Assembly: GCF_036365525.1 (NCBI RefSeq)
Contig: NC_090407.1
Location: forward strand, 12,653,441 to 12,717,440
Reading direction: 5' to 3'
Origin: Heterodontus francisci
Lineage: Eukaryota
Length of the DNA: 64,000 nucleotides
This document shows, piece by piece, positions 2,976 through 42,297 of this stretch. The position numbers and the translations under genes are program-made. Positions within the stretch are counted from its first letter, which is position 1; every line of letters starts with the position of its first letter. The notes beneath the pieces were generated by a model that was not told where the DNA came from, did not search any database, and saw only the letters and a program-made list of their open reading frames with translations.

Positions 2976-3074
2976 GTCTGCCATCAGAATCCTAATGGAA
3001 CAAGATCATAGTCTCTATAATTAAATAATGACAACTCATCTTCCTCTATAGTTACATTGGTCGATGAAAGAAAA

Positions 3075-6439: not shown

Positions 6440-6685
6440 AAGGAAACTTATAAAGTTAAATAGTATTTCCAGTGTTCAGTATACACTGCAGTCCCTGCAG
6501 TGTCCACCTGTTGTGGAAGGCCTCAAGGGCACTGCATTCTCCTTCTCCACGTCGACCCAGATACAGACAAGAAGCAGACAGCCAGAGTAGCCACTCCCAT
6601 GGGCCGTGTCCATCCTGGATCTGTAGATGGCCGCCTTATCTAGTCCCAGGAGCAGACCTATGAGGAGGTTCTCCAACTTGCCTGT
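6440..6685 (-). mobile_element. Tx1/L1-clade LINE ORF2 C-terminal fragment
   Basis: ENLLIGLLLGLDKAAIYRSR...EKENAV resembles Tx1-type ORF2 ends. Confidence 0.6.
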
Positions 6686-8980: not shown

Positions 8981-9152
8981 GAGCTAGATTTTCAACTTGC
9001 TGCCTGGAAGTGAAACTGATGAGGTGGATTGGCTGCATATTATAGAAACTATCCAACTGTCATTTCCAATCAATGGAAATGGGTGGTTGCTATAACAGGC
9101 GGCTGTCTGCAGTGCCAGTTTCATGCCTAGGTGGCAAGTTGAAAATATACCT
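8981..9152. mobile_element. palindromic MITE, probably PIF/Harbinger-derived
   Basis: termini tagattttcaacttgctgcct / aggtggcaagttgaaaatata and central ttcca-atcaa-tggaa give a ~170-bp imperfect hairpin. Confidence 0.65.
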
Positions 9153-10804: not shown

Positions 10805-12667
10805 GATCCTGTTGATAGTTGTGGCTTCAATGATTATGTCCACCACCTGGATTTTAAGTTCCCATGTTTTCCACCATTCACCTGAAAATAAACATAGTTG
10901 TCAGGGGAAATATGTTCTTTTGTCATATACATTGGGTTAAAAGGAATATGATATGTACACTACCCTATCTAGAATATAAAAAGATGCAACAAGGAAAGGC
11001 TTTTGGACCCATCAAACTACTTCCACATGCCATGGACAATCTACCCAAACATGGATTCAGCACGATGCATGTAATCTCCCTGAGCGATACTTCTTCAAAC
11101 ATAATCCTTGATCCTCAATGGTAATTGAACAAAATCCAGAATATTCATCACCCTTACATACCTAAAACCTAATCTTGGTCTGCTATCATCCAGCCAACAA
11201 TTCCACCCCCACCCCCCACCCCACCACTCCACAATGCTACCGAACAAAAAAACATTCACTCCATTCTGCTTCTTGACCCCATACTGTCCCACTGAATTTT
11301 AAAAGCAGTGGAGTGGGCTGGGCTAGGCAAACCAGCTGACCACCTTATTTCCCATCTCTCCAACCACTGACCCAAAGGATCACCAAAAAGTGGGGGCACA
11401 TGCTGAGGCAGTGGTTGCTGGTCTAACGATAGAAGAGGTAGGGCCTAGTAGTGATAATCTCTCCTTCTACAATGACTCCCAGCCCTCTTTGCTTGAAAGG
11501 CCTCCTTCCAGTTTGAGATCTTGAATTAAAATTTTTCTGAAATCTTGCCCCCTTTAAAGGTCCCCCTTCTCCACCAAGTTGCTCCGCGACAGGTGTTCCA
11601 CTGAAATGTTTGCATCGTTAGATGATCACAGGAATGCTTACACATAGCACTTACTGATCACTTAGGTTTTAGATGAAAATGCACTGAACAGTATACCCTG
11701 CCATTAAGGGCCAATCTCAAACTAATGATCAAAAAATACTTGCATTTATATAGCACCTTTCACAACTGTAGGACAACCCAAAATGCTTTACAGCCAACAA
11801 AGTACTTTGAAGTGTAGTCATACAAACATATGAATTAAGAGCAGGAATAGGCCACTCGGCCCCTCGAGCCTGCTCCACTATTCAATAAGATCATGGCTGA
11901 TCTGATTTCCGGTCTAGCCCCGATAACCTTTCACCTCCTTGCTTATCAAGAATCTATCCACCTCTGCCTTAAAAATATTCAAAGACTCTGCTTCCACCGC
12001 CTTTTGAGGAAGAGAGTTCCAAAGACTCAAGGCCCTCCGAGAGAAAAAGTTTCTCCTCATTTCTGTCTTAAATGGGTGACCCCTTATTTTTAAACAGTGA
12101 CCCTAATTCTAGATTCTCACACAGAGGAAACATCTTTTCCACATCCACTCTGTCAAGACCCCTCAGGATCTTCTATGTTGCAATCAAGTCACCTCTTACT
12201 CTTCCAAACCCCAGCAGATGCAAGCCTAGCCTGTCCAACCTTTCCTCATAAGACAGCCCGTCCATTCCAGGTATTAGTCTAGTAAACCTTCTCTGAACTG
12301 CTTCCAATGCATTTACATCCTTCCTTAAATAAGGACACAAATACTGTACACTGTACTCCAGGTGTGGTCTCACCAATGCCCTATATAACTGTAGCATAAC
12401 CTCCCTACTTTTGTATTCAATTCCCTTTCAATAAACGATAACACTCCATTAGCTTTCCTAATTACTTATATACCTGCATTCTAACCTTTCGCGATTCATG
12501 CACTAGGACACTCAGATCCCCCTGCATCTCAAAGCTCTGCAATCACTCACCATTTAGATAATATGCTTTTTTATTCTTCCTGCCAAAATGGGCAACTTCA
12601 CATTTTCCCACATTATACTCCATTTGTCAGATTTTTGCCTACTCACTTAGCTAACTATATCCCTTTG

Positions 12668-12917
12668 CCTTGACCAATTAGAGTCAAGCTGCCTGGCTTA
12701 AATTTCAAACAAAGCTTGACAGTTAACTGTCAGTCACTGTAAACTGGTGCATTCTCCATGGCAGCACCTCTACCAATCAGAGTTCACTTGCCAACCAATC
12801 AACACTCTCTTCTCGTGCAGTATAAGTTGTTGATTTATCTTACATTGGTTATTCCTGCGTAGTGTCCTGATGAGTGCAAGACGAAAAGCTTTGACAACAT
12901 GTCTCTATTTTCAGCAA
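12668..12917 (+). mobile_element. Penelope-type pLTR fragment (family B) inserted in the CR1 RT
   Basis: interrupts CR1 just after FADDTKIG; carries CCAAT boxes, a TATA-like tataag and a hammerhead motif. Confidence 0.7.
12863..12896 (+). ncRNA. minimal type I hammerhead ribozyme motif
   Basis: tgtc-CTGATGA-gt(gcaag)ac-GAAA-agct-TT-gaca: intact core, helix I tgtc/gaca, palindromic helix III AAGCTT. Confidence 0.7.
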
Positions 12918-14187
12918 TTTATGACCTATCTTTGTGTCATCAGCAAATGTAGCAACCATACCTTCGATCCCTTCATCCAAGTCAGTTATATAAATTGTAA
13001 AATGTTGAGGCCCCAGCACAGATCCCTGTGGCACATCATTCGTTACATCTTGCCAACCAAAAAACGATCCATTTATGCCTACTCTCTTTTTCCTGTTAGC
13101 TAGCCAATCTTCTATGCATGCCAATATATTACCCCCAACACCATGAGCTTTTATTTTCTGCATTAACCTTTGATGTGGCACCTTATCAAATGCCTTTCGG
13201 AAATCTAAGTACAGTACATTGACTGGTTCTCCTTTATCCACAGCACATATTACTTCTTCAAGGAACTCAAATAAATTGGTTAAACATGATTTCCCTTTCA
13301 CAAATCCACATTGACTCTGCCTGATTACCTTGAATTTTTCACAGTGCCCTGCTATAACATCTTTAACAACAGCTTCTAACATTTTCCCTATGACAGATGT
13401 TAAGCTAACTGGCCTGTAGTTTCCTGCTTTCTGTCTCCCTCCCTTTTTGAATAAAGGAGTTATATTCACTATTTTCCAATCTAATGGAACATTTGGAGTC
13501 TAGGGAATTTTGGAAAATTGAAACCAACGGATCAACTATCTCACAAGCCATTTCTTTTAAGACCCTAGGATGAAGCCCATCAGGAACCAGGGACTTGTTA
13601 GCCCACAGCTCCAACAATTTGCTCGGTACCACTTCCCTGGTGATTGTTGTAACATAGGAAGCCAATTTGCGCACAGCAAGCTCTTACAAATACCAATGTA
13701 AGAATGACCAGATAATCTGTTTTTGTGATGTCAATTGAGGATAAATATTGGCCAGGACACTGAGGATAACTCCCCTACTCTTCTTCAAAATGAGACTATG
13801 GGATCCTGAGAAAGAAGACAGGGCCTCAGTTTAAGGTCATAACCAAAGGTTGGCACTGCCACCAGTACCACACTAGGGCATTAGTCTTGTTTTTTGTGTT
13901 CAATTGGGATTTGAACCCACAACTTTTAAAGTCAGAAGCAACAGTGCTACTAAGTGAGCCATGATATGTACTTGCTGGTGTTTTACATGTTCTCCATTAT
14001 GTAATCATGGTGAATGGTTAACATTGAGAAAAAATAGAATGAAAAGAACTATTTTTGAAAATTGATCTCACTCAGGCCAATAGTTATTGAACTATAATTA
14101 GCCTCAGTCCCTGGACTAGGGAAGCAAAGAGGAAAATTCAGTCAGCAATCTCACTCCTGATCACTATCTAAGAACCGTGTACACATG

Positions 14188-15865: not shown

Positions 15866-16521
15866 GGTTGCCTGTGTCCTCAGTACCTTGCTCTACGGCA
15901 GCGAGGTCTGGACAACATATGTCAGCCAAGAGCGATGTCTCAATTCATTCCATCTTCGCTGCCTCCGGAGAATCCTTGGCATCAGGTGGCAGGACTGTAT
16001 CTCCAACACAGAAGTCCTCGAGGCGGCTAACATCCCCAGCTTATACACCCTACTGAGCCAACGGTGCTTGAGATGGCTTGGCCATGTGAGCCGCATGGAA
16101 GATGGCAGGATCCCCAAGGACACATTGTACAGCGAGCTCGTCACTGGTATCAGACCCACCGGCCGTCCATGCCTCCGCTTTAAAGACGTCTGCGAACGCG
16201 ACATGAAGTCCTGTGATATTGATCACAAGTCGTGGGAGTCAGTTGCCAGCGATCACCAGAGCTGGCGGGCAGCCATAAAGGCGGGGCTAAAGTGTGGCGA
16301 GTGGAAGAGACTTAGCAGTTGGCAGGAAAAAAGACAGAAGCGCAAGGGGAGAGCCAACTGTGTAACAACCCCGACAACCAATTTTATCTGCAGCACCTGT
16401 GGAAGAGCCTGTCACTAAAATTGGCCTTTATAACCACTCCAGGCACTGCTCCACAAACCACTGACCACCTCCAGGCGCTTACCCATTGTCTCCCGAGACA
16501 AGGAGGCTAAAGAAGAAGAAG
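15866..16521 (+). mobile_element. RTE LINE, 5'-truncated copy
   Basis: LSTLLYGSEVW...LRWLGHVSRMEDGRIPKDTLY; (GAA)n tail; same family as 23405-26062. Confidence 0.92.
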
Positions 16522-17929: not shown

Positions 17930-18170
17930 AACAGAAACTTGCATTTATCTAGCGCTTTTAATGTAGTAAAACATCCCACGGTATTTCATAGGAGCATTAC
18001 CAAACAAAATTTGACACTGAGCCACATAAGGAGATATTAGAACAGGTGACCAGAAGCTTGGTCAAAGAGTTAGTTTTAAGAAGTATTTTAAAGGAAGATA
18101 GAGATGGAGAGGTTTAGGGAGGAAATTCCAAAGCTTAGGGCCTAGGCAGTTGAAGACCTGACTACTATTG
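17930..18170 (-). mobile_element. L2 LINE 3' end
   Basis: aacttgcatttatctagcgcttttaatgtagtaaaacatccc tail; sister copies at about 7505-7830, 31515-31970 and 63845-64000. Confidence 0.75.
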
Positions 18171-18179
18171 CTGAATCTC

Positions 18180-19005
18180 TCATAGAATCATAGAAAGTTT
18201 ACAGCACAGAAAGAGGTCACTTGGCCCATTGTCTCTGAGCCGGCTGAAAAACGAGCCACCCAGCCTAATCCCACCTTCCAGCATTTGGTCCGTAGCCCTG
18301 CAGATTACGGCACTTGAGCTGCATATCCAGACTCCTTTAAAATGAGTTGAGGGTTTCTGCCTTTACTACCCGTTCAGGCAGTGAGTACCACCCTCTGGGT
18401 GAAAAACGTTTCCTCATCTCCCCTCTAATCTTCTATGAATCACTTTAAATCTATGCCCCCTAGTCACTGACATCTTTATTAAGGTAAATAGGTCCTTCCC
18501 ATCCACTCTATCCAGGCCCCTCACAATTTTGTAAATCTCAATCTAATCTCCCCTCAGCGTCCTCTGTTCCAAGGAGAACAACCCCAGCCTATCCAATCTT
18601 TCCTCAAAGCTGCCTTTTTCCAGTCCTGGCAACATCCTTGTAAATCTCTGTATCCTCTCTAGTGCAATTACATCCTTTCTGTAATGAGGTGACCAGAACT
18701 GCACACAGTACTCAAGTTGTGGCCTAACTAATGATTATACAGTTCCAGCATAGCCTCCCTGCTCTTGTATTCTATACCTCGGCTAATAAAGAAAAGGATT
18801 CCAAATGCCTTCTTAACCACCTTACCGACCTGTCCTGCTACCTTCAGGGATCTGTGGACATTCACTTCAAGGTCCCTCACTTCCTCTACACCTCTCAGTG
18901 TATTCCTTTGCTTTGTTTAACCTCCCCCAGTGCATCACCTCACACTTCTCTGAGTTGGATTCCATTTTTCACTTTTCTGTCCACCTGACCAGTCCATTGA
19001 TATCC
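18180..19005 (-). mobile_element. CR1 3' fragment
   Basis: catagaatcataga tail and CR1 ORF2 C-terminal text. Confidence 0.85.
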
Positions 19006-20834
19006 ATTTTAGGTAAGTTCCCATGTCTCCCCAAGAAATATCAAGTAGGTCACAAATTCCTCATCTCTGTGCCTAATATTTAAATTCTTTGAGTGCCACA
19101 GCCTATTCCCGCAGCCTCCCATGGTAAAATGGCACATATTGAACTATGTTCTACACCCTCCTCATGCTTTGTGAATCCCCTGGTACCACATCCACACTAA
19201 ACCCTATCTAATTTCCACCCCAGGAGAAAGTATTTGAGTTGGTGCATGGAAGTGAAGAAACAAGTGATGCAAGGTATGAATTTGAAGGGTGTCGAGGCAG
19301 AGGAACACAGTGGAGGGGGTTGCAGGAACTCACGGGTGGGCTCCAGTCTAAATTTTCCTTCTTCACTTTCCTGTTCATCATCTTTCTTCTTGCGTTCCTC
19401 ATTATCATCATAGTTCACACGGAGGTAGTTGTGTCTCTCCTCTTGATCATCATCATCCTCTGATAAATTGTTCCTTTTTATCTACTGCTCCCACCCAGCC
19501 CCAGCCTGCTGCTGTAATCTTTAGTCAGAACAGGTTTTATAAAGGCTGCACTCTAATTTCAATGCACTCTAACAGATTTGCTTCATTTTAAATCGGTTTA
19601 CTCCCAATCACCATATCCTGCAGTACTCTTCAACCAGATTCTCTGGGGTAGATTTTACCATTTCACATTCCAGGCTTGGAGAGCTATGTGATAAAAGCAC
19701 TAATTGGAATATTAGCATGCAGGTGAAGAATTTGACCCTACTTCATATTTCACCCCTTAAAATGAATTGGATGGAAAGTCAGGCAGGCTGTGAATTGGGA
19801 GCAGCAATCTCTGGGCTCATTATTCCGATTTGTGCTCCTGCCATGTGACATTCTGTGCTGAGAGTGCTAAATGGGTGAATTTGTCCCATAGATCTCTGCT
19901 GTGAATTGAAATTCACAATGAAATTGTGTAGCTCTTGCAGGTAGTAAAAGGGTGCACCACCTAAATAGAAATAGTTTGACAAACCTTCTCTAATCACGCA
20001 TATGACACGTAGCCTGAAGACATATTGAAACATTACACAATTCTGCATGATGTCATTGTGAACAAAAGGACCAATGGCTCTTCTTCGACACCATGCACAA
20101 AAAAAATTGCCAAATATTTATTTCATGCCCCTTTAAAAATGTAACAACTTTTAAAGCATCTTAAATTGTTCTGAATTGGCTCTAGTGTTAGCAGCTTTTT
20201 GGGTTGATGTCTACGTAGGAATTACATTTTGGATAGAGCTTCATTGTTGACCACTCCAATATCTCTCTCAACCCACTGTGATTTTTCCCTTTAGATAAAA
20301 ATAGTTGCCAAGCTTTGCCGCTATGATCTGATCTAGTTAACACTGTGAATTTCTTTAAACACGCCACTACCCATGTTAGGTATTCATCTCACCTGATGAA
20401 ATGGATCTATATAGAATCATGGAATGCTAGAGCACAGAAGGAGGCCATTCAGCTCATCATGTTTGTGCCAGCTCTCTGCAACAGCAACTCATCTAGTCCC
20501 ACTCCCCTGCCTTTCCCAAAATCTAAGAACAATCACATTGAGCTGGTACAATAAAAGGAAATTGCAGTGACTCACAACATAAAATCTCAGTTGATATATT
20601 TTCATGATGTCGCGGTGTAAGATTGTTTCATCATTGGAACCAAATCCTTTTGCTTGATGACATCATAGGCTTCTTTATGTGGCATCACAGTACCAGAGAA
20701 ATCTATAGTCGGCCAGAGACAGGAACCCATACCCTTCATTATTATCTACATTGAGCTTGCAACTCCTTTATGCTATGGGTTTTGATCAGAGATGAAGGAT
20801 TTATCATCTAATTAAATAGATTCTCACAAGCTTG

Positions 20835-21250
20835 TCCAATTGCTCAGTTGGTAAAGGCAATGAACAACCACAGGTCTGAAATTCAAGTCCTGATTTGTGC
20901 TGAGTTAGTTGATCTCAGCCAGGGTGGCAATGAGGGAACAACAATTTGCCTAATTTCCCCCGAGCAAGAAGGGAAAATAAATATTCACCTGGGAATCATT
21001 CTCCAAATCGCCACCCTGCAGGAGTTGTGCCTGTGTGGACATCAGGTGAGGATAGGCTTGGACTTAGCTTTGTTGTCCACCCATGCCACCACAGCATCCC
21101 TCCCTCCCCCCTGCCCACTCTTCCTGCCCCATCATCATGTAATAGCCATCTACTCACTGTCTGGACTCACACATGAAGAATGCCTATTTGAGATATCAGA
21201 CGAAAAATTACACTGTCCTGCAGTGAAGGTCAGTGTCTTTGAGAGGTGAG
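20835..21250 (+). mobile_element. old tRNA-derived SINE-like repeat (family not identified)
   Basis: A-box-like gctcagttggta; tgtgctgagttagttgatctcagc shared with 49210-49320; related pieces at about 5400-5610, 14060-15070, 42600-42930 and 49440-49680. Confidence 0.55.
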
Positions 21251-21869
21251 AAAATTGGGGATAAAAAATCTTTGAACATTTTTAAGGCAGGGGTAATAGA
21301 TTCTTGATAAGGAAGGTGGTTGTATGGTTATTGGCGGTAGGCAGGAACGTGGAGTTGAGGTTACAATCAAATCAACCATGATCTTGTTGAATGGCGGAGC
21401 AGGCTCAAGGGGCCAAATGGTGTACTCCTGCTCCTAATTTGTATGTTCATATGTTCATAGAATCTGCAACTGATTCTTAATATAGTTACAACCAATAGAA
21501 GAACAATTAAAATCAGTAGTATTAAGTTATACAGCTATTATCAAACAGGTTGAAAATACACAGTTTAAAAGGTTGATGACTTGATCAGTGTTTGGCAAAC
21601 CTTAGTTTAAGCAGAAGAAAAAGCCATGGACCAATTTCAATATGACAAAGGCACACAATACCTGATCTGAAAGTTATTGTGATTTTCAGTAAGATATTTC
21701 CCTCACTGCATTTCCACTGGCACTGCCAATCCTGATCCCACATTCCAGCAATTTTTGTTGTTACGGTCAAATTTAAATGCAAAGTGTCAAGAAAACATGC
21801 TATGCCAAATGTGGAATTTTAATTCATCAGTTGGACACTTACATTAAACTTAAAAAGGAAACCTGGTAT

Positions 21870-22269
21870 ATTACAGACAACTTTTACAAAGACTTTGCCA
21901 CAGCTAAAAATGGCTGCCACCATTTGCATTTGAAAACCTTGCACATTCCAAGGCTTCAAAAGCGGAGACACATGTCTGATTAGCCTGTACCCGAAACAAT
22001 GGCTTGCCCTACTGATTGATCTACCTGAGATTGCTTTCATTAGCAAGACATTCAAAGCCATCCTGGGACATTAACATTGAAAGGGCGAACCCCCAATGGA
22101 AAATATTGGCACCATGAGGCTTGAGAGATGGAAATTCCTAAACTTGAATCTTATTAGAAGGTACCAGAGAATACACTGAGACAGTTATGTCCATCTCTGT
22201 GAAAGTGGAGAGTTTCCCTTGGACAAGCAGACAAGCCAGTGACTCAATCTGTGCAGAAGCCAGAAGGGC

Positions 22270-22311
<42 letters not shown>

Positions 22312-22815
22312 CCTGTCTCTCTCTCCAGAAGACCTGGTGGGGCATGCAAAGCCAAGCTGCCAGCTGCTAGATCCAAGACAAAGACACTGAGAAGGAAGCT
22401 CTCTGCTCAACTGTCTCCAAGGATGACATCAATGCAGAATTTTAGGACCATGAGTTCAACCAGAAGACCACTAAAGTCACCAGACAACACAGACTGTATT
22501 ATTTTTATTTGTTCTGGACTTTAATCCAACACAAATCTATTCCTCATCATTCTGTACTCTATTTGTGCAAGTGTGATTCTCGTGTGCGTGTGTGTGAAAG
22601 TGTAATTTAATTTTATTATTTTTATTTAGATCGGGTTTAGATTTTTATGTATAATAAACTCACCTCTTTCTTGTTTAAACTAAAGAAAACCTGTCTTTTA
22701 TGATTACAACAATGGTAAAAAGTAAAACACTCACTGAAGTGGTAAGCACATCCACTGTTGAAAAAGGAATAAACCCTGTTGCGGTCAAATAAGAGGAAGG
22801 ACAAGAGGGGAGCCT
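21870..22815 (+). mobile_element. solo-LTR-like element with internal (CT)n microsatellite
   Basis: (CT)n at 22274-22325, TG-rich tract, AATAAA; organisation resembles 56696-57476; boundaries approximate. Confidence 0.45.
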
Positions 22816-22949
22816 TTCAGAAAAATAAATGATAAATAATGAAGAAAGCTAGCCCAATGACTAAACTTCATATGTTGTTTGACTGGTGTAAATTAGAAGT
22901 TTAGCTAGTTCATCATTTTGCATCTTTTGTTACCTGTTGTGTTTTTGGA

Positions 22950-23404
22950 TGATACCAGAACTGAGAGGATATACTTATCAGGATAGGCTGAACAGGGTGG
23001 GGCTCTTTTCTCGAGAAAAGAGAAGGCTGGGGGTGACCTATTAGAGGTCTTTAAAATTATGAAGGGATTTGATAAAGTGTAAGTAGAGAAGATGGTTTCC
23101 ACTTATAAGGAATATCAAAATTGGAGCCTTAAATACAAGATAGCCACCAATAAATCTAATGAAGAATTCAATACTTCTTTCCCCAAGGAGTGGTACGAAT
23201 GTATAACTCACTATCACATGGAGTAGTTGAGGTGCATAGATAGCATAGATGCATTTAAAGGGAAACTAGATAAGTACAGGAGAAAGGACTAGAAGGATAT
23301 GCTGATGGGGTTAAATGAAGGGAGGTGGGAGGACGCTCATGTGGAGCATAAACAGCAACGTGGACCTGAATGGCCATAGGCTGAATGGTCTGTTTCTGTG
23401 CTGT
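22950..23404 (+). mobile_element. CR1 3' end, target of the RTE insertion; its last bases continue at 28031-28060
   Basis: ...ggctgaatggtctgtttctgtgctgt | aaattctatataattatgt is a CR1-type tail split by the insertion. Confidence 0.8.
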
Positions 23405-26062
23405 CTTCTTCTTCTTTGGCCTCCTTGTCCCGAGAGACAATGGGTAAGCACCTGGAGGTGGTCAGTGGTTTGTGCAGCAGCGCCTGGAGTGGCTATAAAG
23501 GCCAATTCTAGAGTGACAGACTCTTCCACAGGTGCTGCAGATACAATTGGTTGTCGGGGCTGTTACACAGTTGGCTCTCTCCTTGCGCTTCTGTCTTTTT
23601 TCCTGCCAACTGCTAAGTCTCTTCGACTCGCCACGCTTTAGCCCCACCTTTATGGTTGCCCGCCAGCTCTGGCGATCGCTGGCAACTGACTCCCACGACT
23701 TGTGATCAATGTCACAGGACTTCATGTCATGTTTGCAGACGTCTTTAAAGCGGAGCCATGGATGGCCGGTGGGTCTGGTACCAGTGACGAGCTCGCTGTA
23801 CAATGTGTCCTTGGGGATCCTGCCATCTTCCATGCGGCTCACATGGCCAAGCCATCTCAGGTGCCGCTGGCTTAGTAGGGTGTATATGCTGGGGATGTTG
23901 GCCGCCTCGAGGACTTCTGTGTTGGTAGTACGGTCCTGCCACCTGATGCCAAGGATTCTCCAGAGGCAGCGAAGAAGGAATGAATTGGGACGTCGCTCTT
24001 GGCTGATGTACGTTATCCAGGCCTCGCTGCTGTAGAGCAAGGTACTGAGGACACAGGCTTGATACACTTGGACTTTTGTGTTCTGTGTCAGTGCGCCATT
24101 TTTCCACACTCTCTTGGCCAGTCTGGACATAGCAGAGGAAGCCTTTCCCATGCGCTTGTTTAATTCTGCATCGAGAGACAGGTTACTGGTGATAGTTGAG
24201 CCTAGGTAGGTGAACTCTTGAACCACTTCCAGAGTGTGGTTGCCGATATTGATAGATGGGGCATTTCTGACGTCCTGTCCCATGATGTTCATTTTCTTGA
24301 GGCTGATGGTTAGGCCAAATTCATTGCAGGCAGCCGCAAACCTGTCGATGTGTCTCTGCAGACACTCTTCAGTGTGAGATGTTAATGCAGCATCGTCAGC
24401 AAAGAGGAGTTCCCTGATGAGGACTTTGGTCTTCGCTTTTAGACGGGCAAGGTTGAGCAACCTGCCACCTGATCTTGTGTGGAGGAAAATTCCTTCTTCT
24501 GAGGACTTAAATGCATGTGAGAGCAGCAAGGAGAAGAAGATCCCAAACAGTGTAGGTGCAAGAACACAGCCCTGTTTCACGCCGCTCAGGATTGGAAAGG
24601 GGTCTGATGAGGCGCTGCTATGCTGAATTGTGCCTTTCATATTGTCATGGAATGAGGTGATGATACTTAGTAGCTTTGATGGACATCTGATCTTTTCTAG
24701 TAGTCTGAAGAGACCACTTCTGCTGACGAGGTCAAAGGCTTTGGTGAGATCAATGAAAGCAACATAGAGGGGCATCTGTTGTTCACGGCATTTCTCCTGT
24801 AGCTGGCGAAGGGAGAACAGCATGTCAATGGTGGATCTCTCTGCAGGAAAGCCACACTGTGCCTCAGGGTAGACACACTCAGCCAGCTTCTGGAGCCTGT
24901 TTAAAGCGACACGAGCGAAGACTTACCCCACTATGCTGAGCAGGGAGATTCCACGGTAGTTGTTGCAGTCACCGCGGTCACCCTTGTTCTTATAGAGGGT
25001 GATGATATTGGCATCGCGCATGTCCTGTGGTACTGCTCCCTCATCCCAGCACAGGCAAAGCAGTTCGTAGAGTGCTGAACGTATAGCAGGCTTGGCACTC
25101 TTGATGATTTCAGGGGTAATGCTGTCCTTCCCAGGGGCTTTTCCACTGGCTAGAGAATCAATGGCATCACTGAGTTCCGATTTTGTTGGCTGTATGTCCA
25201 GCTCATCCATGACTGGCAGAGACTGGGCTGCATTGAGGGCGGTCTCAGTGACAACATTTTCCCTGGAGTACAGTTCTAGGTAGTGCTCCACCCAGCGGTC
25301 CATTTGCTTGCGTTGGTCAGTGATTGTGTCCCCTAATTTAGATTTGAGGGGGGCGATCTTCTTGATGGTCAGCCCAAAAGCTCTCTTAATGCCATCATAC
25401 ATCCCTCTGATATTTCCTGTGTCAGAGGCCAGCTGAATATGACTGCATAGGTGTTGCCAGTAGTCATTTGCGCAGCGCCTGGCTGTTCTTTGTGCAGTGC
25501 TTCTGGCTAATTTAAGTGCTACGGATGTTAACTCTCTGGGGGCTTTCTTGTAGTTCAGCAGTGCGATGCGCTTAGCGGCTATGACAGGTTCCAGCTCTTC
25601 AATGTGAGATTGAAACCAGACTGCATTCCGCTTCACACAATTTCCATAGGTGGTCATTGCTGAGTCATAGATGGCGTCTCTAATGTGGGCCCACTTGGTC
25701 TCTGCATCCCCTGTGGGAGTGTTTTGAAGGGCTTTTTCAAGTGAATTTAGAAACTTGCGTGACAGCTGTGGATGAGAAATTCTGCTAGTGTTGATGCGTG
25801 GGCGGCCCTTCTGCTTGGAGTGATGCAGCTTCTTTGGTTTGAGGCTAACCTTGCTGCACACCAGGGGATGGTCGGTGTCGCAGCCCACACTGTGGAAGCT
25901 GCGTGTGACTTGAACACTGTTTAAAGAGGCTCGCCTTGTGATGATGAGGATCGGCTGGTGCCAACGACATGATCTTGGGTGCCTCCAAGAAACCTGGTGA
26001 CAGGGTTTAGTGTGAAAGAATGAGTTGGTGATGCAGAGGTTATGATAGGTACACAACTCAAG
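23405..26062 (-). mobile_element. RTE LINE, non-inverted 3' part (end of APE, RT, C-terminal C2H2-like motif)
   Basis: ORFs 24923..26098 and 23462..24823 are in frame, separated by one TAA; NYRGISLLS, FIDLTKAFD, GVKQGCVLAP, LFADD; (GAA)n tail at 23405. Confidence 0.95.
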
Positions 26063-26131
26063 AAGCGTGTGTGTGCGCGTCTGTGTGTGAGTGAGCACTG
26101 AAACTGCTGGCGAGAAAAACCTCTTATCAAC

Positions 26132-26200
26132 ATGCCTAAGTCAAGGGAAGTTGTTTCTATGAGCTCAGACAGCGAATTGGATAGTGAAGTTGATCAAAAG
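26132..26200 (+). pseudogene. SUB1: transduced first coding exon of a SUB1/PC4-like gene
   Basis: MPKSREVVSMSSDSELDSEVDQK then phase-0 donor AAG|GTACAG; matches the vertebrate PC4 N-terminus [24 protein letters not shown]; no further SUB1 exons recognised in the window. Confidence 0.85.
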
Positions 26201-26659
26201 GTACAGGCAAATAAGATGGCGACGTCCAGGACGGTGGTCGAGTAAGGCCGGGAGAGGAACTCACCGCAGAGAGAGGGTGAACGGCTGGCAATCCGGGTAA
26301 GGACTGCTGATGAAGACCCTGCCAGTTGTGGCCAAGCTTGGAAGGCCACTTGGTTGTGTTCGGGGAGCCCGTCCATGGCGACGATCAGGAGGAGGAGCGG
26401 CCACATGGTCCCGGCAGCAGCTCCCGCTCACTCGGCGACTCGTCAATCAATTTCAATTATATTGGACATTTAAGAACGAGTAACGCTGTGGACTCTATAT
26501 TGCACTGTAGAGAATATTAACTGTTCTGCCTGCATCACTCGTTATTTAAAAGCATGGGCGGCTGGAAAGGGGAATGGAAGCTGATGAATATAGCATTTCT
26601 ACGATGAGCACCATTGTGAAAAGGACAATGGTGGGAGCTGATGCAATGTTTTATTACCT

Positions 26660-26890
26660 GCACCCCCTGCTCCCAGCTCACCCCCTCGCACCCCTTTCCC
26701 CCTACCCCCCTCGCACCCCCTTCCCAGCTCCCCCCTTGCACCATCTTTCCCCCGCACCCCTCTCCCCTACCCCCTGCAGCCCCCCTCTCAGCTCCCCCTG
26801 CACCCACTTCCCTCCACCCCTTCCCACCGCACTCCTCCTCCTCGCACCCCCCCCCGCCACCCCCTTCCCTCCACCTCCTCCCACCGGCAT
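26660..26890. repeat. C-rich low-complexity tract (G-runs on minus strand)
   Basis: repeated gcacccc/ctcccc units. Confidence 0.8.
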
Positions 26891-26899
26891 CCACCTACT

Positions 26900-28030
26900 C
26901 CTGTGTAGGGGCCCCATCAACCCCACTGCCTAGTGGGTGTCGCGGGAGAGACCAAGGCTAAGGGAGTCAACCCTAACAGAAAATCCGGAGCGGAACCCCA
27001 AAGGCGGTCATGTGTCACCTTTGGCATGTTTCCAGCAGTTCCTGCAGCCACACTGGTGCCAAACGTCGTGCTTTGCACTCCTTTGGACCCCACCAGGAAG
27101 GCCGAGAGAGGAGTTTTGTCACTTGGGCAACTCACAACCTCCATACATCCGCCCAGGCATGTGCCATGGAGAGGTCACTCCATAGTCGCCTCACAGCGAC
27201 CAAATCAACACGGAAGGCAGCAGTTACGGGTTATAAGTCCAGCTCAATTGGCGTAGAGATTGGCCTTTGACGGTGGGAGAGGTCATCGCATCTCACTGGA
27301 CAGCTACCGCCCGCCTCAAACCGGGCAGCCCCTGGTCAGTAAGGTTCTGTCCCGCCACAGTCCACCTGCTTCAATGGGTCTTGGAGCTCAGGGTCATTGC
27401 CCGACAAGTGGACTGTAACACCGCACCAAACAGCACGACCAAAAAAGGAAAGAAGGTACCAGCCCTTCGTTTTGCAAGCTGGAACGTCAGAACCATGTGT
27501 CCTGGCCTGTCGGAAGACTTTACACAAATCAACGATTCTCGGAAGACCGCCATCATCAACAACGAGCTCAGTAGACTCAATGTGGACATTGCGGCACTTC
27601 AGGAGACACGCCTCCCTGTAAGCGGATCTCTAAGAGAGCAAGACTACACCTTCTTCTGGCAGGGTAGGGATCCTGAAGAACCAAGACAGCACGGAGTGGG
27701 CTTCGCCATCAGAAACTCTTTGCTCAGCATGATAGAGCCACCCTCAAATGGCTGGGAACGCATACTGTCCATCCGACTGTTCACCGCCTCTGGTCTAGTA
27801 CACCTACTCAGCATCTATGCACCAACACTCTGCTCCCCACCTGACGCTAAAGACCAGTTCTATGAGGAACTCCATAATATCATTAGTAGCATCCTCAACA
27901 CCGAACACCTTTTCCTGCTGGGGGACTTTTATGCCAGGGTTGGGGCTGACCATGACTCATGGCCCTCTTGCATTGGGCGCTATGGCATTGGAAGGATGAA
28001 TGAGAATGGACAGAGACTGCTTGAGTTGTG
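26900..28030 (+). mobile_element. RTE LINE, inverted 5' part (5' UTR + APE endonuclease)
   Basis: ASWNVRT, DIAALQETR, HGVGF, IYAPT, LLGDF, NENGQRLLELC; ends where the minus-strand half begins. Confidence 0.93.
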
Positions 28031-29299
28031 TTCTGTGCTGTAAATTCTATATAATTATGTGTACTTATCTCCCAAATAAATAACAATTTAGCAGTTCCAG
28101 AGCCTCATTTCAGGTTATCTCAAACTACTCAGATAAACAATGATTATGGTGAGATTGACTCTGAGCCTGTTGAACCCGGGTTGGTTTTATCTTTGCATTA
28201 GCTGATAACCTCAGGTCAGCTCTATCTTTCACTTTACTAACCTTGGGCCAGCTTGTTGCTGGATTTATGTCTGGGTTTGGAGATTTTAGATTTCTCTGAG
28301 TTTGATGAGTTGAGTTGTATCTGACTCTTGAGTTTGGTTGTGGGTTGATCTATCTGTGGATTTACTGAGGTTGCATTGGGTCTTTCTCTGGATTATGGGT
28401 TTTCAATTTTTTCCAGTTTGACATGAAAATTATTTGTACAACTTTGATACAAATTTAAATGTAAATTAAGGAGGCAAACATACAATGTTCATTCAGTTTT
28501 TGTGCCTAATTTTTAGAGTTTTTTCACATTTTGTTTTTAGTTTTCTTTTTATTTATGGGGTGTAGGTGTCACTGGCAAGGCCAGTATTTATAATGAAAAG
28601 TAAAAACTTCAGCATAATTACAACCTCGAAAGATTGCTAATATAGAATGTTGATGGTGTATGGAATGCAGAACTTAGAACTTTGGCTATCACCTCATGCT
28701 TTTGACTAGTTTGGGCCCAGATTCTAGTTCAGACCAGTTACCCTCCCATCCTGTAACCTCTACAATAGCCACGATAGTTAAACAAGTCATGGGAAAATCT
28801 ATTGAAGAGATACCAAGTCTATTGCCTGCTATTAAGATGATACTGAGAATCCCTAATTGCCCTTAAGTGTAAAAATAGGAGAAAATAACTGAGGAAAAAT
28901 CGACCCCAAAAACCTGGGATCAATTCAGAGATAATTAGTTTTTTTTACTTTGTACGTTACTCAGACGCAAGAAAAAAGAGACTTAAAAAACAGTCAATCT
29001 AAATCACAAGCCACAATTATTTACAAGGTTCACCATCACCACTTTTATGGAGTTCATCATCAAACCCTCAACCTTTAGTAGTTTCCTTCTGCCTGTGTAT
29101 GCTGGAGTGTTTAAGTGCCCTTCATTCCAAATGTAGCTGCAATGTCTTTAATCTCAATCAAGATGTGCCCCTTGGATGTTATCTGAAGCCCAATTATTAT
29201 ACCACAGAGTTTATCATCATTGGATAAAGTAAATTGCACATCAAAATGTTTGATGTAACTTCATTATCTTAGCCACTAGCTATAAAAATTAAACTAAAA

Positions 29300-29630
29300 A
29301 AGTTTTTTTTTCCCAAAATGTCATTTGGATAATTATCTGATTGCCCATTAAAACAAATGCCACCATTCATAATTGTGATGTTTTGGTATTCAGGCACTAA
29401 TTAAATCAGTTTGCAGACGTTTGAGAGCGGAGGACCCCTGTGACTTTGTTCCCCTGAGGTAATTTGCATGTTAATTATCATGGCGGCTGTTGGCTTAGAT
29501 CGAGAGAAACAGGTTATAAACAGCTTTAATTAGCAGCTTAATCATTTTTACAAGAAATTGCAAAGCACCGTGATACATTAGTATGCATAAAATTAAACCA
29601 GATCAGCATGGATGCTCATGTTAAATCTTC
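29300..29630. promoter_or_regulatory. candidate enhancer-like non-coding block
   Basis: non-repetitive; several TAATTA motifs, SOX-like CTTTGTT 29444-29450, octamer ATTTGCAT 29462-29469; conservation not tested. Confidence 0.4.
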
Positions 29631-31514
29631 AACACAGAGCTGAGGTGACAAGATGGCTGACTAAGCCCCCATCTTACAAAGCTTTTGCTGAAAGACCATT
29701 TAAATAATAATCTCAGAATCCTACATTTTAGCAGATAATTAGAAGTTTTATGCATTGGCTGCAGGCATGGTGCCCATGTATCATCCTGGCACAGTTGTAC
29801 AATTGAGGGAAATGCTTAGAGATCACTAAATCCAAGGGTTAAATGAAACAAGTTCATTACAAAAAACATTCAATGCAGAAATCCTGATACAGTTTACTCC
29901 TCTTTGTTTGAAGTCTCTTAATTTAATTGATTCAATTTTCTACCACGAAATTCTTATTTCATCGCGTTATAAACGTTGATAATTCAAAAATGTTTAGCAC
30001 AAAAAATGCCGTTGATTTATCAGGAGTGGACACTAAAGTAGATTAGGAACTGAGTGGTCTTTTTCCATCACAGTTTTGAACTGAACAATTTGCATCTTGA
30101 CTGAGCTGACCAAAAAATTCTTTAAAAAGCAGTCACAAAAGCTTCGAGTTTGATCTAGAGCTTAGTGCTGTCTAACAAAGGCCTATCTCCATGTTTAGGT
30201 GATTATAAAAGATTCCATAATTTTGAGATTCTCCTGGTGTTTTAAATAATATTCCAACCTTAACTGACAGGACCAAAAATAAGCAGATTTACTCATCATT
30301 CATCTTGCTTGCTGCCTATGAACCTTGCTGTGTGCTGTTGACTGCTGTGTTTGCTGGCTTAATAACAAAAGACTAAATTTCAATAGTAATTCACTGATTG
30401 CAAAGTCACTGATATTTAAAAACATAGCAAATCTCTGAAGCTGTTACTGACTGTAGATTGATATGGTTCACCTTCCTGCTGTCTTAGCAATTGCGACTTT
30501 CTCTTCAGGGTACTTCCTTCTACAAACTTCCCATATAAATGTAAGTTCTTCCCAAGGTCTGATATCTAAACTTTAAGGGGTAAAAATTTGACTAAGGATG
30601 GTATTGGATCGGCTGCCCATTAAACACAATGCCTGACACTCAGCTCTATTGCAGTCAATGGAATTAAATATCGGTAATCAGTATTAAAAATCAGATGCAT
30701 TTCTACCGCTAAATCCCTTTTATTCCACTTATATCTTCTGATGTGGAGATGTTATTTATTTAATGATGTTCCATTCATTTATACCATTAAAACAAATATC
30801 ACAATACAAGCCATAACTACCACCACCCCCCACATCCCCCCCCCCCCCACCCCCACACCACCCCACACAACCCCTCAACTTACTTTACCGCTGTCCTGCT
30901 TCCTGTCCAGATTTGGGCTTGACAAAGGTGGCAACCCTACCTGAGATCGTAAAGTTTGACAAAAGCCTTTTATAAATGCATCTTTTGGGTTGTATTGCAA
31001 TATTAGCAATATCATCTTCAAGCCATTATAAAGTGTATGGCAACATACAACAAGTAATAGTTTACAGTGAGGCCTGCAATTAACAAACAAGCTAATTCTT
31101 GTGGGAAGCCCCTGTCTAATGAATAACCTGGTGTGGTGTCTGTTGTATTGAGGTCTGTGTGTAATGAACAAGGTGGATTTGGTACAACCCTCAAGTGAAT
31201 TTCCTTGTGATTGATAACCTGGTTTCGATATTGCAAATCATCTTTCTATATGTACAGAAGGATCTTGGCGATGTTTTCAGTAATGTCTAACCTCAGTGTT
31301 TTTAATTTTTCTTCTCAATCTTTCTGAGGATGTGACAGATACGAGGTTAAACCTCTACACACCTGTTGATGTTGACTAAAAGCACATTTGTGTTCCTTCC
31401 ATACTCTATTGCTTGGTCTTGTTAACATTCAGGATCTGCTGGGGAAGAGGGTTATAAAAGAGTCAAAAGATGTCAGCATCTTGTAATGAAAAACCTAAGA
31501 TGTAATTCCAACAA

Positions 31515-39336: not shown

Positions 39337-42297
39337 GGCCTGAATATTTTGGGGCCCCGAAGTTGGGAACAGAGGTGGGGTGGGGGCGGGGGCGGTGGTT
39401 GGGAGGGCCGAAAAGACTGGTGCTGGGCAGCTTGTCAATTTCAAGATGCCGATCCCGGCACCAGCAATAATCACCGGGGCTGGGGGATGGCAAGGCAGGA
39501 ATCTTGCTCTCCTCCCAATTGAGGCCAATTAATAGTATTGAAAAGCTCATTAAAAGCTTGTCAGGATTGAAGTTCAAATTTTTCAAGGGGCAGAGAGGTA
39601 ACACTCCCTTCTGAAACAGATCAGCTGAGAGGAGGCAGGTACAGAGTGTGGAGATAGTCATGGCTGCTCCAGGGCATCACTCTGGCCCAAAGAGGGTTAG
39701 TGAGGCATAGGGGGACTCAGCTCTTGGTAAGTGAATGCCTTTGGCACAGTGCAGGTGGCAGGGAAAGTGGGCATGCACCACCCAGGCATTGAATGGGGTC
39801 AGCACCCCCCTGACATTACAGGGACAGAAGAGCAGGAGACAAGGCTGCCAAGGAAAATTGTGTGGCTGCCTCCCCAGAAGGAAGGCTCCAGCTGGCAATG
39901 ATAGGCAACATGCTCCATAGGAAGGGCAGAACCCTGGGTATCAGGAGAGCTTGGGAGAAGAAAGAGGGGCAGGAAGGCAACGGAGGCCAAACCCTCAACA
40001 CAGGATCTACAGCTGAAGACAGAGCTACCTGGAGAAGGATGAGAATCAGTGCTGCAGGAGACTGCGACTCTCCAGGCAGATGGCCACAGACATCTGTGCC
40101 CTCATTGCCAAAGACTTCGCACCTCACAGCACTGGTCGCCATGCCCTGCCAGTGGCCGTCAAATTCACTGTGGCCTTGAACTTCTTTGCTTCTGGCTCCT
40201 TCCAAGGATCAGTTGCAGACCTTAGTGGCATCTCGCAAATGGCTGCACTCCACTGCATCTCTCTGGTCACTGATGCCCTCTTTGCCAGAGCTGGACAGCA
40301 CATTCATTTAGTGACAACACCGAGCTTCACAGCGATAGAGGTATTGCCTCCATCACTGGATTCTCCCAGGTGCAGAGCATCATCAATTGCACCCATGTGG
40401 CCATCAAGGTACCCAATGAACAGCCAATCAGATCCATCAACAGGAAGGGCTTCCACTCCCTCAACATCCAACTGGTCTGTGACCACAACAAGAGCTTCCG
40501 CCGTGTGTGTTCACTTTCCTGGCAGCTGCCATGACACCTTCATCCTGTGCCAGTCCAAGCTGCTGCAGATCTTCAGTCCAACTCCCAAAGTGCATGTATG
40601 GATCCTAGAGGACAAGGGATATCTCTTGAAGAGATGGCTACTGACCCCTCTGCAGGAGCCCCAGATAGAGGCACAGAGGCGATACAACCAATGCCACCTG
40701 TCAGTAGGACAACCATTGAGCTGGCCATCGGGCTTCTGAAAATGCGATTCCAGTGCCTGAACTGGTCAAGTGATGCCCTCCAATATCCTCCTGCAAGGGT
40801 TTCGGTCATTGTGGTGGTCTGCTGTGCTCTCCATAACATGGCTCTCCAGAGATGTGTGGACTTGAGGACAATGAGGCCTTGGAAGGAGTCAGTTCATCTG
40901 TGCAGGAGGAGGAGATGCGAGAGGAGGAAGAAGCAGAGGGAGATGACGCTGAATAGAGAGGTAGGGGTTGGCAACATGTCCATATATGGACACCGGTGTC
41001 CGTAGTAAAAATTGAGATCTGTGGTAATTTATTCAAAAACTTATGACTTATAAACTGTCGATAAAAGACATAATTTGTCTTTGCACATATTGCAATTGTG
41101 ATGCAGATGGGCCAAATTTGGCTTCTGCTTCACCCGCAAACTGACAATGACACAAAGATTCTACGGTAACAACAGTTAACAGTAACAATAGTTACTGTAG
41201 AATCTTGATGACACTGAACCAAAGAAGCTTTGTTATCCAATCAGACAAAGTGTTAGTTATGTTTGCATTTTTCGTGTTTTTTTCTTATCCGTGGGAAAAA
41301 AACATGGCGTCGAATTCATATAAAGTTTGGGAAAGAGAATTTGTTTTGTAGCTGTGACAGCGAGGTACTTTCGAAAACATTAGAGCGACTTGAATTTATT
41401 ATTATTAGCTTGCTAGCTGACTAGGACAGCTATCCAATCGCTTTTTCCAGTGTGGAAAATTATTTGCTGTTTTACTGTTTGAATGACAGAAAGTCACTTC
41501 TCAGTTCTGGTTTTTATCATGTAATGGTTTAGCTAGTTGGCTACATGCTAACACAGCATTAGCACATGGTGTAGCTAGCTCTATACTATCTACAAAATAA
41601 TTCGCATTGGCATTACATACTGTTTTGCTTGCTAGCTAGCTAATACAGTTGTGCTGCTCTCCATTGATGTTTGTATGCTTAGCTACTTTATTTATAGGGA
41701 CAAATGTGTTTTAAATTGGACTGTGTTTTGATGGCATTAAGTTGGCTATCACTTTATATACAGATTAATTGCCCCCATGTCTGTGGCTGAGTCAATAATT
41801 TTGGTAAGTGTCTGTGGTGCAACATGTTAGTGCCGATCCCTGCAGAGAGGTGCCCATGCTGCATGATGAGGTGGTCTCCTCCTGCCACCTTCGGGGAAGA
41901 GGACCTCTGCCTCATGCCCTCCAGCATTAGATCCAGGTTGGCATCAATGAAGCAAAGGGCTGCCCTGCCCCAGGTGCCAGGCCTCCTCCTCCCCTGTGAC
42001 ATCTCACTTTCCTCTGGTGCAGTGGAAGACTTTGGCACAAACCACAGATCTCTCCCTCAGGACAACCAGCAGCCTCAGTGATGACTGCCATGGGAATCTA
42101 AATGAGTCCCACACTTCATCTTACCTGCCTCCGATCCCACTCCAGTGGCTCTAAGTGGACAGGAAACCTGTCTCCATACTAATTAAGGGCTTTCCCACAC
42201 AAAAATCTGAATTTTAATCAGTTTCCCACTTGAGGCGGTTTCTGACCAAATACAAACACAGCTCCTATTTCCCACCTCCATGACAAAAATTCAGCCC
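39337..42297 (+). mobile_element. PIF/Harbinger transposon, internally deleted: transposase pseudogene (+, about 39900-40950) and Myb/SANT partner 5' part (-, about 41850-42040)
   Basis: VALNFFASGSFQ, FPGSCHDTFIL, EDKGYLLKRWLLTP, IELAIGLLKMRFQCL, CCALHNMAL; termini ggcctgaatatttt / aaaaattcagccc. Confidence 0.9.
40962..41842. mobile_element. non-autonomous hAT-type element nested in the Harbinger
   Basis: TIRs TAGGGGTTGGCA / TGCCGATCCCTG; 8-bp TSD tagagagg (40954-40961) / cagagagg (41843-41850). Confidence 0.8.

What the first reader, a model, noticed from the sequence alone, without database searches (positions are those of the whole stretch)
26063..26900. RTE retrotransposon has captured the 5' UTR, first coding exon and intron of a SUB1/PC4-like gene (5' transduction)
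Seen: about 840 bp of non-RTE DNA lies between the two RTE halves and inside the TSD pair. It encodes MPKSREVVSMSSDSELDSEVDQK (26132-26200) ending at a phase-0 GT donor, followed by CpG-rich intron-like DNA with a YY1-type AAGATGGCG (26213-26221) that runs into the RTE 5' UTR in the same orientation. The exon is too short for the ORF track. Known: this matches the Ser/acidic N-terminus of the coactivator PC4 (SUB1); 5' transduction from upstream host promoters is described mainly for L1/SVA. Inference: a source RTE sits sense-oriented in the intron after this exon, is transcribed from the host housekeeping promoter, and the chimeric unspliced RNA was retrotransposed. The junction at 26063 would approximate the host TSS. 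The copy drops a portable ATG exon with a donor into a new locus.
Basis: partly seen in the sequence, partly recalled or inferred. Interest (0 to 1): 0.9.

Follow-up and report, generated by a model that had tools for sequence, protein, structure and literature searches.

The report
Shark RTE carrying SUB1-like first exon
A dead jumping gene (an RTE-type LINE) in a horn-shark-like genome took the start of a highly expressed, PC4/SUB1-like host gene with it when it copied itself, which is a clean non-mammalian example of a process already known from human L1 elements.

Summary
One insertion (23405-28030) is flanked by an 11-bp target duplication and holds an RTE LINE in two opposed halves that overlap by 12 bp, the twin-priming signature. 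Between the halves lie 855 bp that most family copies lack.

RNA contigs from two species cover 26063-26200 heavily and leave the window exactly at the GT donor. They continue with codons for AKRK, so this is a real, spliced first exon. All RNA contigs and the only DNA contig at 26160 read C where the window reads T. At least one other genomic version therefore exists, and that is the expressed one. No other PC4 exon lies in the window.

The "intron" reading is only partly right. Only 26201-26241 is low-copy. 26242-~26460 is a repeat of about 500 copy-equivalents. ~26461-26655 has about 12-15 near-identical copies. 26656-26917 is a C-rich minisatellite shared by many copies.

Best reading (0.6): host-promoter read-through RNA, retrotransposed once. 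Template switching remains possible. The PC4 identity rests on layout and memory, not a database hit. The scan noted a similar RTE-host chimera (SNTB1) elsewhere in this genome.

The parts
23394..23404 (.). Left copy of the 11-bp target-site duplication TTCTGTGCTGT
   Evidence: Read directly. It is identical to 28031-28041. Paralogous copies of the host repeat run uninterrupted across this site (joints 23354->28031 and 23349->28033).
23405..26062 (-). RTE 3' segment in direct orientation: end of the endonuclease domain, the reverse transcriptase, a C-terminal CCHC motif, the 3' UTR and an (AAG)4 tail. It has an in-frame stop at 24923-24925.
   Evidence: Pfam RVT_1, E 3.5e-21. The stop is seen. 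It matches P0001 residues 223-279 at 88%. DNA depth is about 1e6 against about 4 for single copy. Family homology ends at 26062 (loose ends).
26051..26062 (-). 12-nt CTTGAGTTGTGT, duplicated at the inner end of the direct segment. The other copy is at 28020-28031 on the plus strand.
   Evidence: inverted repeat I2. Read. Normal copies join 26050 and 28031 on opposite strands with 12 shared letters (joints).
26063..26131 (+). Host-gene 5' UTR. Its 5' end marks where the second cDNA stopped, so it approximates the transcription start.
   Evidence: It is low-copy in DNA. The RNA run X5 holds 0.13 of the sampled words of 26063-26900. That share needs the UTR as well as the coding part to be present in RNA (inference).
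26132..26200 (+). First coding exon of a PC4/SUB1-like gene (23 codons), ending at a phase-0 AAG|GT donor.
   Evidence: Translation. RNA contigs of organisms A and B cover it and continue after 26201 with CGAAGAGAAAG, giving DQK-AKRK (table 7). At 26160 the window has T; all RNA contigs and the only DNA contig have C (table 3).
26201..26241 (+). Retained start of the host intron. It is low-copy and contains the YY1-type AAGATGGCG at 26213-26221.
   Evidence: RNA leaves the window here. Depth arithmetic on bin 26077-26257 places the start of multi-copy DNA at about 26242-26245.
26242..26460 (+). Unclassified interspersed repeat of about 220 bp, about 500 copy-equivalents. It is either a repeat inside the host intron or the 5' module of a long-UTR RTE subfamily.
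   Evidence: Depth 2172 against about 4. 16-29 variant contigs at 26298 and 26354. An organism-B RNA contig aligns at 26242-26441. No Rfam or tRNA match.
26461..26655 (+). AT-rich segment present in roughly 12-15 near-identical copies.
   Evidence: A single DNA contig of depth 49.6 differs from the window at 26567, 26584 and 26605 (table 3). RNA depth is below 1.
26656..26917 (+). C-rich minisatellite (units of about 25 and 14 nt) that precedes the RTE 5' end in hundreds to thousands of copies, with varying unit number.
   Evidence: Tandem-repeat finder and repeat families. Depth is 2,381 at 26680 and 13,900 for the bin. Joints skip 65 nt within the array.
26918..28030 (+). RTE 5' segment, inverted relative to the 3' segment: short 5' UTR plus the N-terminal endonuclease domain. 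The GDFN motif reads GDFY in this copy.
   Evidence: Pfam Exo_endo_phos, E 6.6e-9. 90% identity to Heterodontus francisci P0001. Family contigs begin to align at 26918/26919 (table 8).
28031..28041 (.). Right copy of the 11-bp target-site duplication
   Evidence: Read directly. The flank beyond it is single-copy, with a 587-nt DNA contig showing 0 differences (records 8 and 16).

Best explanation
A full-length RTE-clade LINE lay in sense orientation just downstream of the first exon of a highly expressed PC4/SUB1-like gene. Transcription from the host promoter made an unspliced read-through RNA, in this order: 5' UTR; first coding exon; start of intron 1; repeat-rich sequence; RTE.

The RTE machinery copied that RNA into a new site in one event. 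First-strand synthesis from the (AAG)n tail produced the direct 3' segment. A second priming from the other target overhang, inside the endonuclease region, ran to the 5' end of the RNA and produced the inverted 5' segment, which carries the host sequence (twin priming).

The copy is now dead. There is no sign that the transferred exon is used here.

Shown: the anatomy, the single-event signature, that the exon is real, and that another, expressed version exists.

Inferred: that the chimera arose by co-transcription at the host locus, and where the host-derived part ends (26241 or 26917).
For: - Single event: an 11-bp TSD flanks the whole 4.6-kb structure and the element ends in an (AAG)4 tail. 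Paralogous copies of the host repeat are uninterrupted at the site.
- Twin priming: the two halves are adjacent parts of one ORF, with a 12-nt overlap. An uninverted horn-shark copy, P0001, spans both, and normal copies join 26050 to 28031.
- Orientation: the extra DNA is colinear and in sense with the RTE 5' segment.
- Real exon: RNA depth is 6,340-8,999 in two species, with a splice-type break at 26201 that continues with AKRK codons.
- No splicing at this junction: the donor GT and 41 low-copy nt behind it are retained. This fits unspliced read-through and not a spliced exon-LINE junction or a mature mRNA template.
- A second version exists: 26160 is C in all RNA contigs and in a DNA contig of depth 14 (single copy is about 3-4).
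- Not the gene in place: no further PC4 exon motifs were found in the window.
- PC4-like layout: Ser/acidic residues followed by a K-rich stretch match the published PC4 layout (PMC10134458).
Against: - The parental locus was not seen, so colinearity of 26201-26917 with a SUB1 intron is untested.
- 26242-26917 is multi-copy, and the copy number is not monotonic (2172, then 342, then 13,900). The true 5' end of the source element may therefore be at about 26242. A source only 41 bp behind a donor site is somewhat awkward and fits template switching equally well.
- PC4 identity is not backed by any database hit.
- Depths come from contigs, not raw reads, so copy numbers are rough.
Confidence: 0.6

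Rival explanations
1. RNA-level or RT-level recombination. The RTE reverse transcriptase, in the twin-primed second reaction, reached the 5' end of a long-5'UTR RTE RNA at about 26242. It then switched to a SUB1 pre-mRNA 41 nt into intron 1 and copied it to its cap. RNA ligation before reverse transcription would give the same result. No RTE need ever have sat in the SUB1 gene.
For: - The boundary between low-copy and multi-copy DNA at about 26242 is sharp. With 26461-26655 as a lineage-specific insert, copy numbers fall towards a possible element 5' end at 26242 (body about 1e5, C-rich array about 600-3,500, 26242-26460 about 540 copy-equivalents).
- Another RTE in this genome was noted with the 5' end of SNTB1 mRNA at its front (s1-872199; not checked here).
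- In the human L1 survey, 15 of the 17 gene loci that formed mRNA/L1 chimeras hold no intronic L1 (PMC13174262).
Against: - The template would have to be unspliced pre-mRNA of a gene whose mature mRNA is far more abundant.
- The switch point would have to fall by chance just behind the first donor.
- Most family copies lose homology to the window at 26918, not 26242 (table 8). A family 5' end at 26242 is therefore unproven.
Confidence: 0.2
2. Spliced exon-LINE chimera, by cis- or trans-splicing of exon 1 to an acceptor at the RTE, as described for most human mRNA/L1 chimeras.
For: First exons in sense orientation are the typical cargo of such chimeras (PMC13174262).
Against: The donor GT and the sequence behind it are retained after 26200, while RNA of the host gene leaves the window exactly there. 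This junction was therefore not spliced.
Confidence: 0.03
3. This is the true SUB1-like gene in place, with its first exon merely surrounded or rearranged by an RTE insertion and a later inversion.
For: The exon, its donor and a YY1-type motif are intact. Introns in large shark genomes can exceed the 38 kb of window downstream.
Against: - The exon lies inside a TSD-bounded retrotransposon insertion whose halves overlap by 12 nt.
- Antisense RTE coding sequence sits where the promoter should be.
- All RNA contigs, including those from the same sample as the DNA, read C at 26160, not the window's T. The C version has several times single-copy depth.
- No PC4 exon motifs were found downstream.
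Confidence: 0.03
4. Assembly artefact: repeats collapsed or mis-joined so that a SUB1 fragment appears between two RTE pieces.
For: The DNA runs hold only 0.35 of the stretch's sampled words. No listed contig spans 26062|26063.
Against: A mis-join would not produce a perfect 11-bp TSD, a simple-repeat tail at the correct end, and breakpoints that are adjacent in the LINE with a 12-nt overlap. The low word share is expected where the contig builder drops minority variants of repeats.
Confidence: 0.04

Closest known systems
L1 5' transduction and mRNA/LINE-1 chimeric insertions (human survey in PMC13174262: 17 cases, mostly first exons in sense; RAP1GDS1/L1PA2 promoter co-option)
   Same: A host first exon in sense orientation sits at the front of a near full-length LINE. 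It was inserted as one TPRT event with a TSD. The cargo comes from an actively transcribed gene.
   Different: The element belongs to the RTE clade (single ORF, simple-repeat tail), not L1, and the host is a shark. The exon-LINE junction is not a splice junction, because the donor and at least 41 nt of intron are retained. The 5' part was also inverted by twin priming. The source locus was not identified.
Twin priming (L1 5' inversion; Ostertag and Kazazian 2001, cited from memory)
   Same: The 5' segment is inverted. The breakpoints are adjacent in the element with a small duplication (12 nt). One TSD flanks the whole structure.
   Different: It is seen here in an RTE-clade LINE. The inverted arm reaches the RNA 5' end and so carries non-LINE cargo.
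Template-switch chimeric retrocopies (U6/L1 and similar; tripartite chimeras in Magnaporthe, PMC2104539)
   Same: A cellular RNA 5' part is fused in sense upstream of a LINE sequence inside one TSD.
   Different: Those chimeras use mature, abundant RNAs and usually 5'-truncated LINE parts. Here the host part is unspliced and the LINE part is full-length.
Earlier scan note s1-872199 (RTE capped by about 415 nt of SNTB1 mRNA, same genome)
   Same: The same LINE clade and the same genome, with the 5' end of a host mRNA at the front of the element in a single insertion.
   Different: A different host gene. I could not see that sequence, so the type of junction cannot be compared.

Membership tests
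LINE 5' transduction (read-through from an upstream host promoter) | Non-LINE DNA is contiguous with the LINE 5' end, in sense, inside the TSDs of a single insertion | tested here: met
   26063-26917 lies between 26062 and 26918 in sense with the 5' segment. The TSD is at 23394-23404 and 28031-28041.
LINE 5' transduction (read-through from an upstream host promoter) | The extra DNA maps to another locus that lies directly upstream of a source element | tested here: inconclusive
LINE 5' transduction (read-through from an upstream host promoter) | The cargo is unspliced genomic sequence, not a spliced junction to the LINE | tested here: met
   GTACAG and 41 low-copy nt follow the exon, while the host mRNA leaves the window at 26200/26201.
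Twin-priming 5' inversion | The 5' part is inverted, the breakpoints are adjacent in the element with a small duplication or deletion, and one TSD flanks the whole | tested here: met
   The 12-nt CTTGAGTTGTGT is present at both inner and outer breakpoints (I2). P0001 spans both halves with residues 223-228 shared. TSD.
Twin-priming 5' inversion | Microhomology between the target overhang and the internal priming site | tested here: inconclusive
   Only 1 nt (T at 28031) is shared unambiguously between the LINE and the TSD.
RTE-clade LINE | A single ORF with an APE-type endonuclease and a reverse transcriptase, and a simple-repeat rather than poly(A) tail | tested here: met
   Pfam Exo_endo_phos and RVT_1. 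The tail is (AAG)4. The joined length is about 3.76 kb.
RTE-clade LINE | Phylogenetic placement of the RT within the RTE clade | not tested
   There is only indirect support. The best named homologues are 'craniofacial development protein 2-like'; that this name marks a BovB/RTE-derived endonuclease is my own knowledge.
PC4/SUB1 transcriptional coactivator | N-terminal Ser/acidic (SEAC) segment followed by a Lys-rich segment | tested here: met
   The window peptide has Ser at positions 9, 11, 12, 14 and 18 among D and E residues, and RNA continues with AKRK. Human PC4 has Ser at 9-13, 15, 17 and 19 followed by a K-rich segment (PMC10134458). The residue-level match to human PC4 is recalled from memory.
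PC4/SUB1 transcriptional coactivator | C-terminal PC4 ssDNA-binding domain (Pfam PF02229) | not testable with these tools
   Only the first exon is present. A motif scan of all six frames found no PC4-domain exon in the window.
PC4/SUB1 transcriptional coactivator | Significant sequence-search hit to a named PC4 protein | tested here: inconclusive
   The 23-47 aa queries were too short or too low in complexity: PDB, Atlas, representatives (one spurious hit), homologue search (no candidates).
Spliced mRNA/LINE chimera (cis- or trans-splicing) | The exon ends at its donor and is joined directly to the LINE or to an acceptor, with the donor GT absent | tested here: not met
   GT is retained at 26201-26202 with 41 further low-copy nt.

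The most novel reading that the evidence does not exclude
The SUB1-tagged element was not a one-off. It was a productive source driven by a housekeeping promoter. The roughly 12-15 near-identical copies of 26461-26655 and the several copies of the exon would then be its progeny. Together with the SNTB1-capped RTE in the same genome, this would mean that promoter-poor shark RTEs routinely renew their 5' ends by hijacking host first exons.
Probability: 0.25. Interest if true: 0.65.

Novelty: new member of a known kind. Interest (0 to 1): 0.4.

Why it matters
This case suggests that two behaviours described mainly for mammalian L1 also occur in an RTE-clade LINE of a cartilaginous fish: capture of a host first exon at the 5' end, and twin-priming inversion. 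If the read-through reading is right, it is a concrete case of a LINE transcribed from a housekeeping promoter, which is one proposed route by which LINEs acquire new 5' regulatory sequence. The inverted arm also approximately marks the transcription start of the host gene. The copy itself is dead and shows no sign of use, so its local functional impact is probably nil.

Tried and rejected
- **Reaching other copies through incidental ORFs.** The 70-aa frame 26197-26406(-) gave no hit.
- **Naming the exon by search.** PDB phmmer found only designed repeat proteins. The Atlas gave no usable hit. The representative library gave one spurious low-complexity hit. Searches of papers for the recalled human N-terminus found nothing.
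- **Classifying 26242-26460.** There was no Rfam family (only a sub-threshold miRNA match in the C-rich array), no tRNA, and no second copy in the window.
- **Findings index by sequence.** It returned nothing even for the canonical RTE 5' UTR, which served as a positive control. Its blanks therefore carry no weight.
- **Ideas rejected.**
  - A later, independent retrocopy inserted at the inversion junction: the segment has no tail and no TSD of its own.
  - The YY1 box as the start of the LINE: it lies in the low-copy part.
  - The real gene in place: see the rival explanations.

Full report
**Anatomy**

The window is repeat-rich vertebrate DNA. The best named relatives of the element's endonuclease are two Heterodontus francisci proteins (90% and 89% identity). 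The genome is therefore a horn shark or close kin.

Between 23405 and 28030 lies one insertion. It is flanked by the direct repeat TTCTGTGCTGT at 23394-23404 and 28031-28041. It interrupts an older interspersed repeat, and other copies of that repeat run straight across the site (joints 23354->28031 and 23349->28033). These act as paralogous empty sites.

The insertion holds a LINE in two opposed pieces.

- On the minus strand, 26062 down to 23405 encodes the end of the endonuclease domain, the reverse transcriptase (Pfam RVT_1) and a C-terminal CCHC motif. It ends in (AAG)4.
- On the plus strand, 26918-28030 holds a short 5' UTR and the N-terminal endonuclease domain (Exo_endo_phos).

The two pieces are adjacent parts of one ORF and share 12 nt, CTTGAGTTGTGT (26051-26062 reverse-complemented = 28020-28031, I2). 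An uninverted horn-shark copy, P0001, spans both, with residues 223-228 common to the two alignments. DNA contigs of normal copies join 26050 to 28031 on opposite strands.

This is the twin-priming signature. It agrees with the scan's own separate note on this element (s1-873637).

The copy is dead. It has an in-frame stop at 24923-24925, and GDFN reads GDFY in the endonuclease.

**The extra DNA**

Family homology stops exactly at 26062 and, for most copies, resumes at 26918/26919 (loose ends and table 8). The 855 bp in between run in sense into the RTE 5' segment.

In a twin-primed insertion, the inner end of the inverted arm is where the second cDNA stopped. That point is the 5' end of the RNA template. 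The RNA therefore began at about 26063.

**The exon is real**

26132-26200 translates to MPKSREVVSMSSDSELDSEVDQK and is followed by GTACAG.

Two runs behave as RNA: X5, from the same sample as the DNA, and X6, from a second species. Both have zero depth on the single-copy flank. Both cover the exon bin at 8,999 and 6,340.

In X5, two contigs leave the window at 26201 and continue with CGAAGAGAAAG. The message therefore reads ...GAT CAA AAG GCG AAG AGA AAG, which is DQK-AKRK (table 7). So 26200 is a used splice donor of an abundant mRNA.

X5 holds 0.13 of the sampled words of 26063-26900. That share is only reachable if the 69-nt leader is in the RNA as well (inference).

The peptide's layout is Ser/acidic followed by Lys-rich. 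This matches the published description of the PC4 N-terminus (PMC10134458) and my recollection of the human sequence. No search tool could confirm the name, because the exon is too short.

**A second version exists**

At 26160 the window reads T (codon ATG, Met). Every RNA contig in both species reads C (ACG, Thr). So does the only DNA contig covering the site, at depth 14 against 3-4 for single copy (table 3).

That contig ends about 30 nt from the variant. This is what an assembly-graph bubble gives, so both versions are probably present in that individual (inference). The expressed gene is therefore elsewhere, and the window holds a slightly diverged copy.

A six-frame motif scan found no PC4-domain exon anywhere in the window.

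**What lies between the exon and the RTE**

Single-copy depth is about 4.

| Stretch | DNA depth | Reading |
|---|---|---|
| 26077-26257 (bin) | 162 | This is what about 14 up to ~26242-26245 plus about 2,170 beyond would give, so 26201-26241 is low-copy like the exon |
| 26242-~26460 | about 2,170, with 16-29 variant contigs and a 95%-identical RNA contig in the second species | Interspersed repeat of about 500 copy-equivalents |
| ~26461-26655 | one contig of depth 49.6, three differences | About 12-15 near-identical copies |
| 26656-26917 | 2,381 at 26680; 13,900 for the bin; joints that skip units | C-rich minisatellite shared by many copies |

The repeat at 26242-~26460 has no Rfam or tRNA match.

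Two readings fit these depths.

- These are ordinary repeats and unique sequence of the host intron, with the source RTE about 700 bp in, and the near-identical copies are sibling transductions.
- The source belonged to a long-5'UTR RTE subfamily that begins at about 26242, so only 179 nt (26063-26241) are host-derived.

Contig depths cannot separate these two readings.

**Mechanism**

The retained donor and intron start argue against a spliced exon-LINE junction, which is the commonest form among human mRNA/L1 chimeras (PMC13174262). They also argue against a mature mRNA as template.

The simplest account is an unspliced read-through RNA from the host promoter across an intronic, sense-oriented RTE. 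I put this at about 0.6.

Template switching onto a pre-mRNA, or RNA ligation, stays at about 0.2. Three things support it:

- the boundary at 26242 is sharp;
- in the human L1 survey, 15 of the 17 gene loci that formed chimeras hold no intronic L1;
- the scan noted another RTE in this genome capped by the 5' end of SNTB1 mRNA (s1-872199; unchecked here).

**Limits**

- All laid runs were contigs, so depths are rough and rare variants are dropped.
- The sequence index of earlier findings failed a positive control.

**Verdict**

This is a new example, in an RTE-clade LINE of a shark, of a process known from L1. It is well documented by RNA and TSD evidence, and of moderate interest.

Noticed in passing
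window 9416-10846 (-): An uninterrupted 476-aa ORF with V-set and C2-set immunoglobulin domains (B7/butyrophilin-like), apparently intronless. The scan also noted it, as s1-873606.
   Followed up: partly
window 26242-26460 (+): An unclassified repeat of about 220 bp with about 500 copy-equivalents and sharp boundaries. It is transcribed at a low level in two species and has no Rfam or tRNA match. It may be a 5' module of an RTE subfamily.
   Followed up: partly
window 22950-23404 and 28031-28070: An older interspersed repeat (depth about 18,000-30,000) was the target of the RTE insertion. Its paralogues are continuous across the 11-bp target site.
   Followed up: partly
window 15870-16521 (+): A 654-bp 3' fragment of the same RTE family, 92.8% identical to 23405-24058 and in the opposite orientation. 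It is the only other copy in the window.
   Followed up: yes
window 40080-41005 (+): Two overlapping frames match the PIF/Harbinger-type DDE_Tnp_4 transposase domain, so this is a decayed DNA transposon.
   Followed up: partly
window 12849-13469 (-) and 50912-51397 (-): Reverse-transcriptase fragments of other LINE families (RVT_1).
   Followed up: no
P0001 and P0004 (Heterodontus francisci, NCBI): Public gene models named 'craniofacial development protein 2-like' or 'uncharacterized protein' are RTE endonuclease ORFs. P0001 joins the 27010-type upstream frame to the endonuclease frame. P0004 joins unrelated N-terminal sequence to the endonuclease. They are probably annotation artefacts of repeats.
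   Followed up: no
window 22269-22325: A (CT)n microsatellite that gives rise to spurious ORFs on both strands.
   Followed up: no
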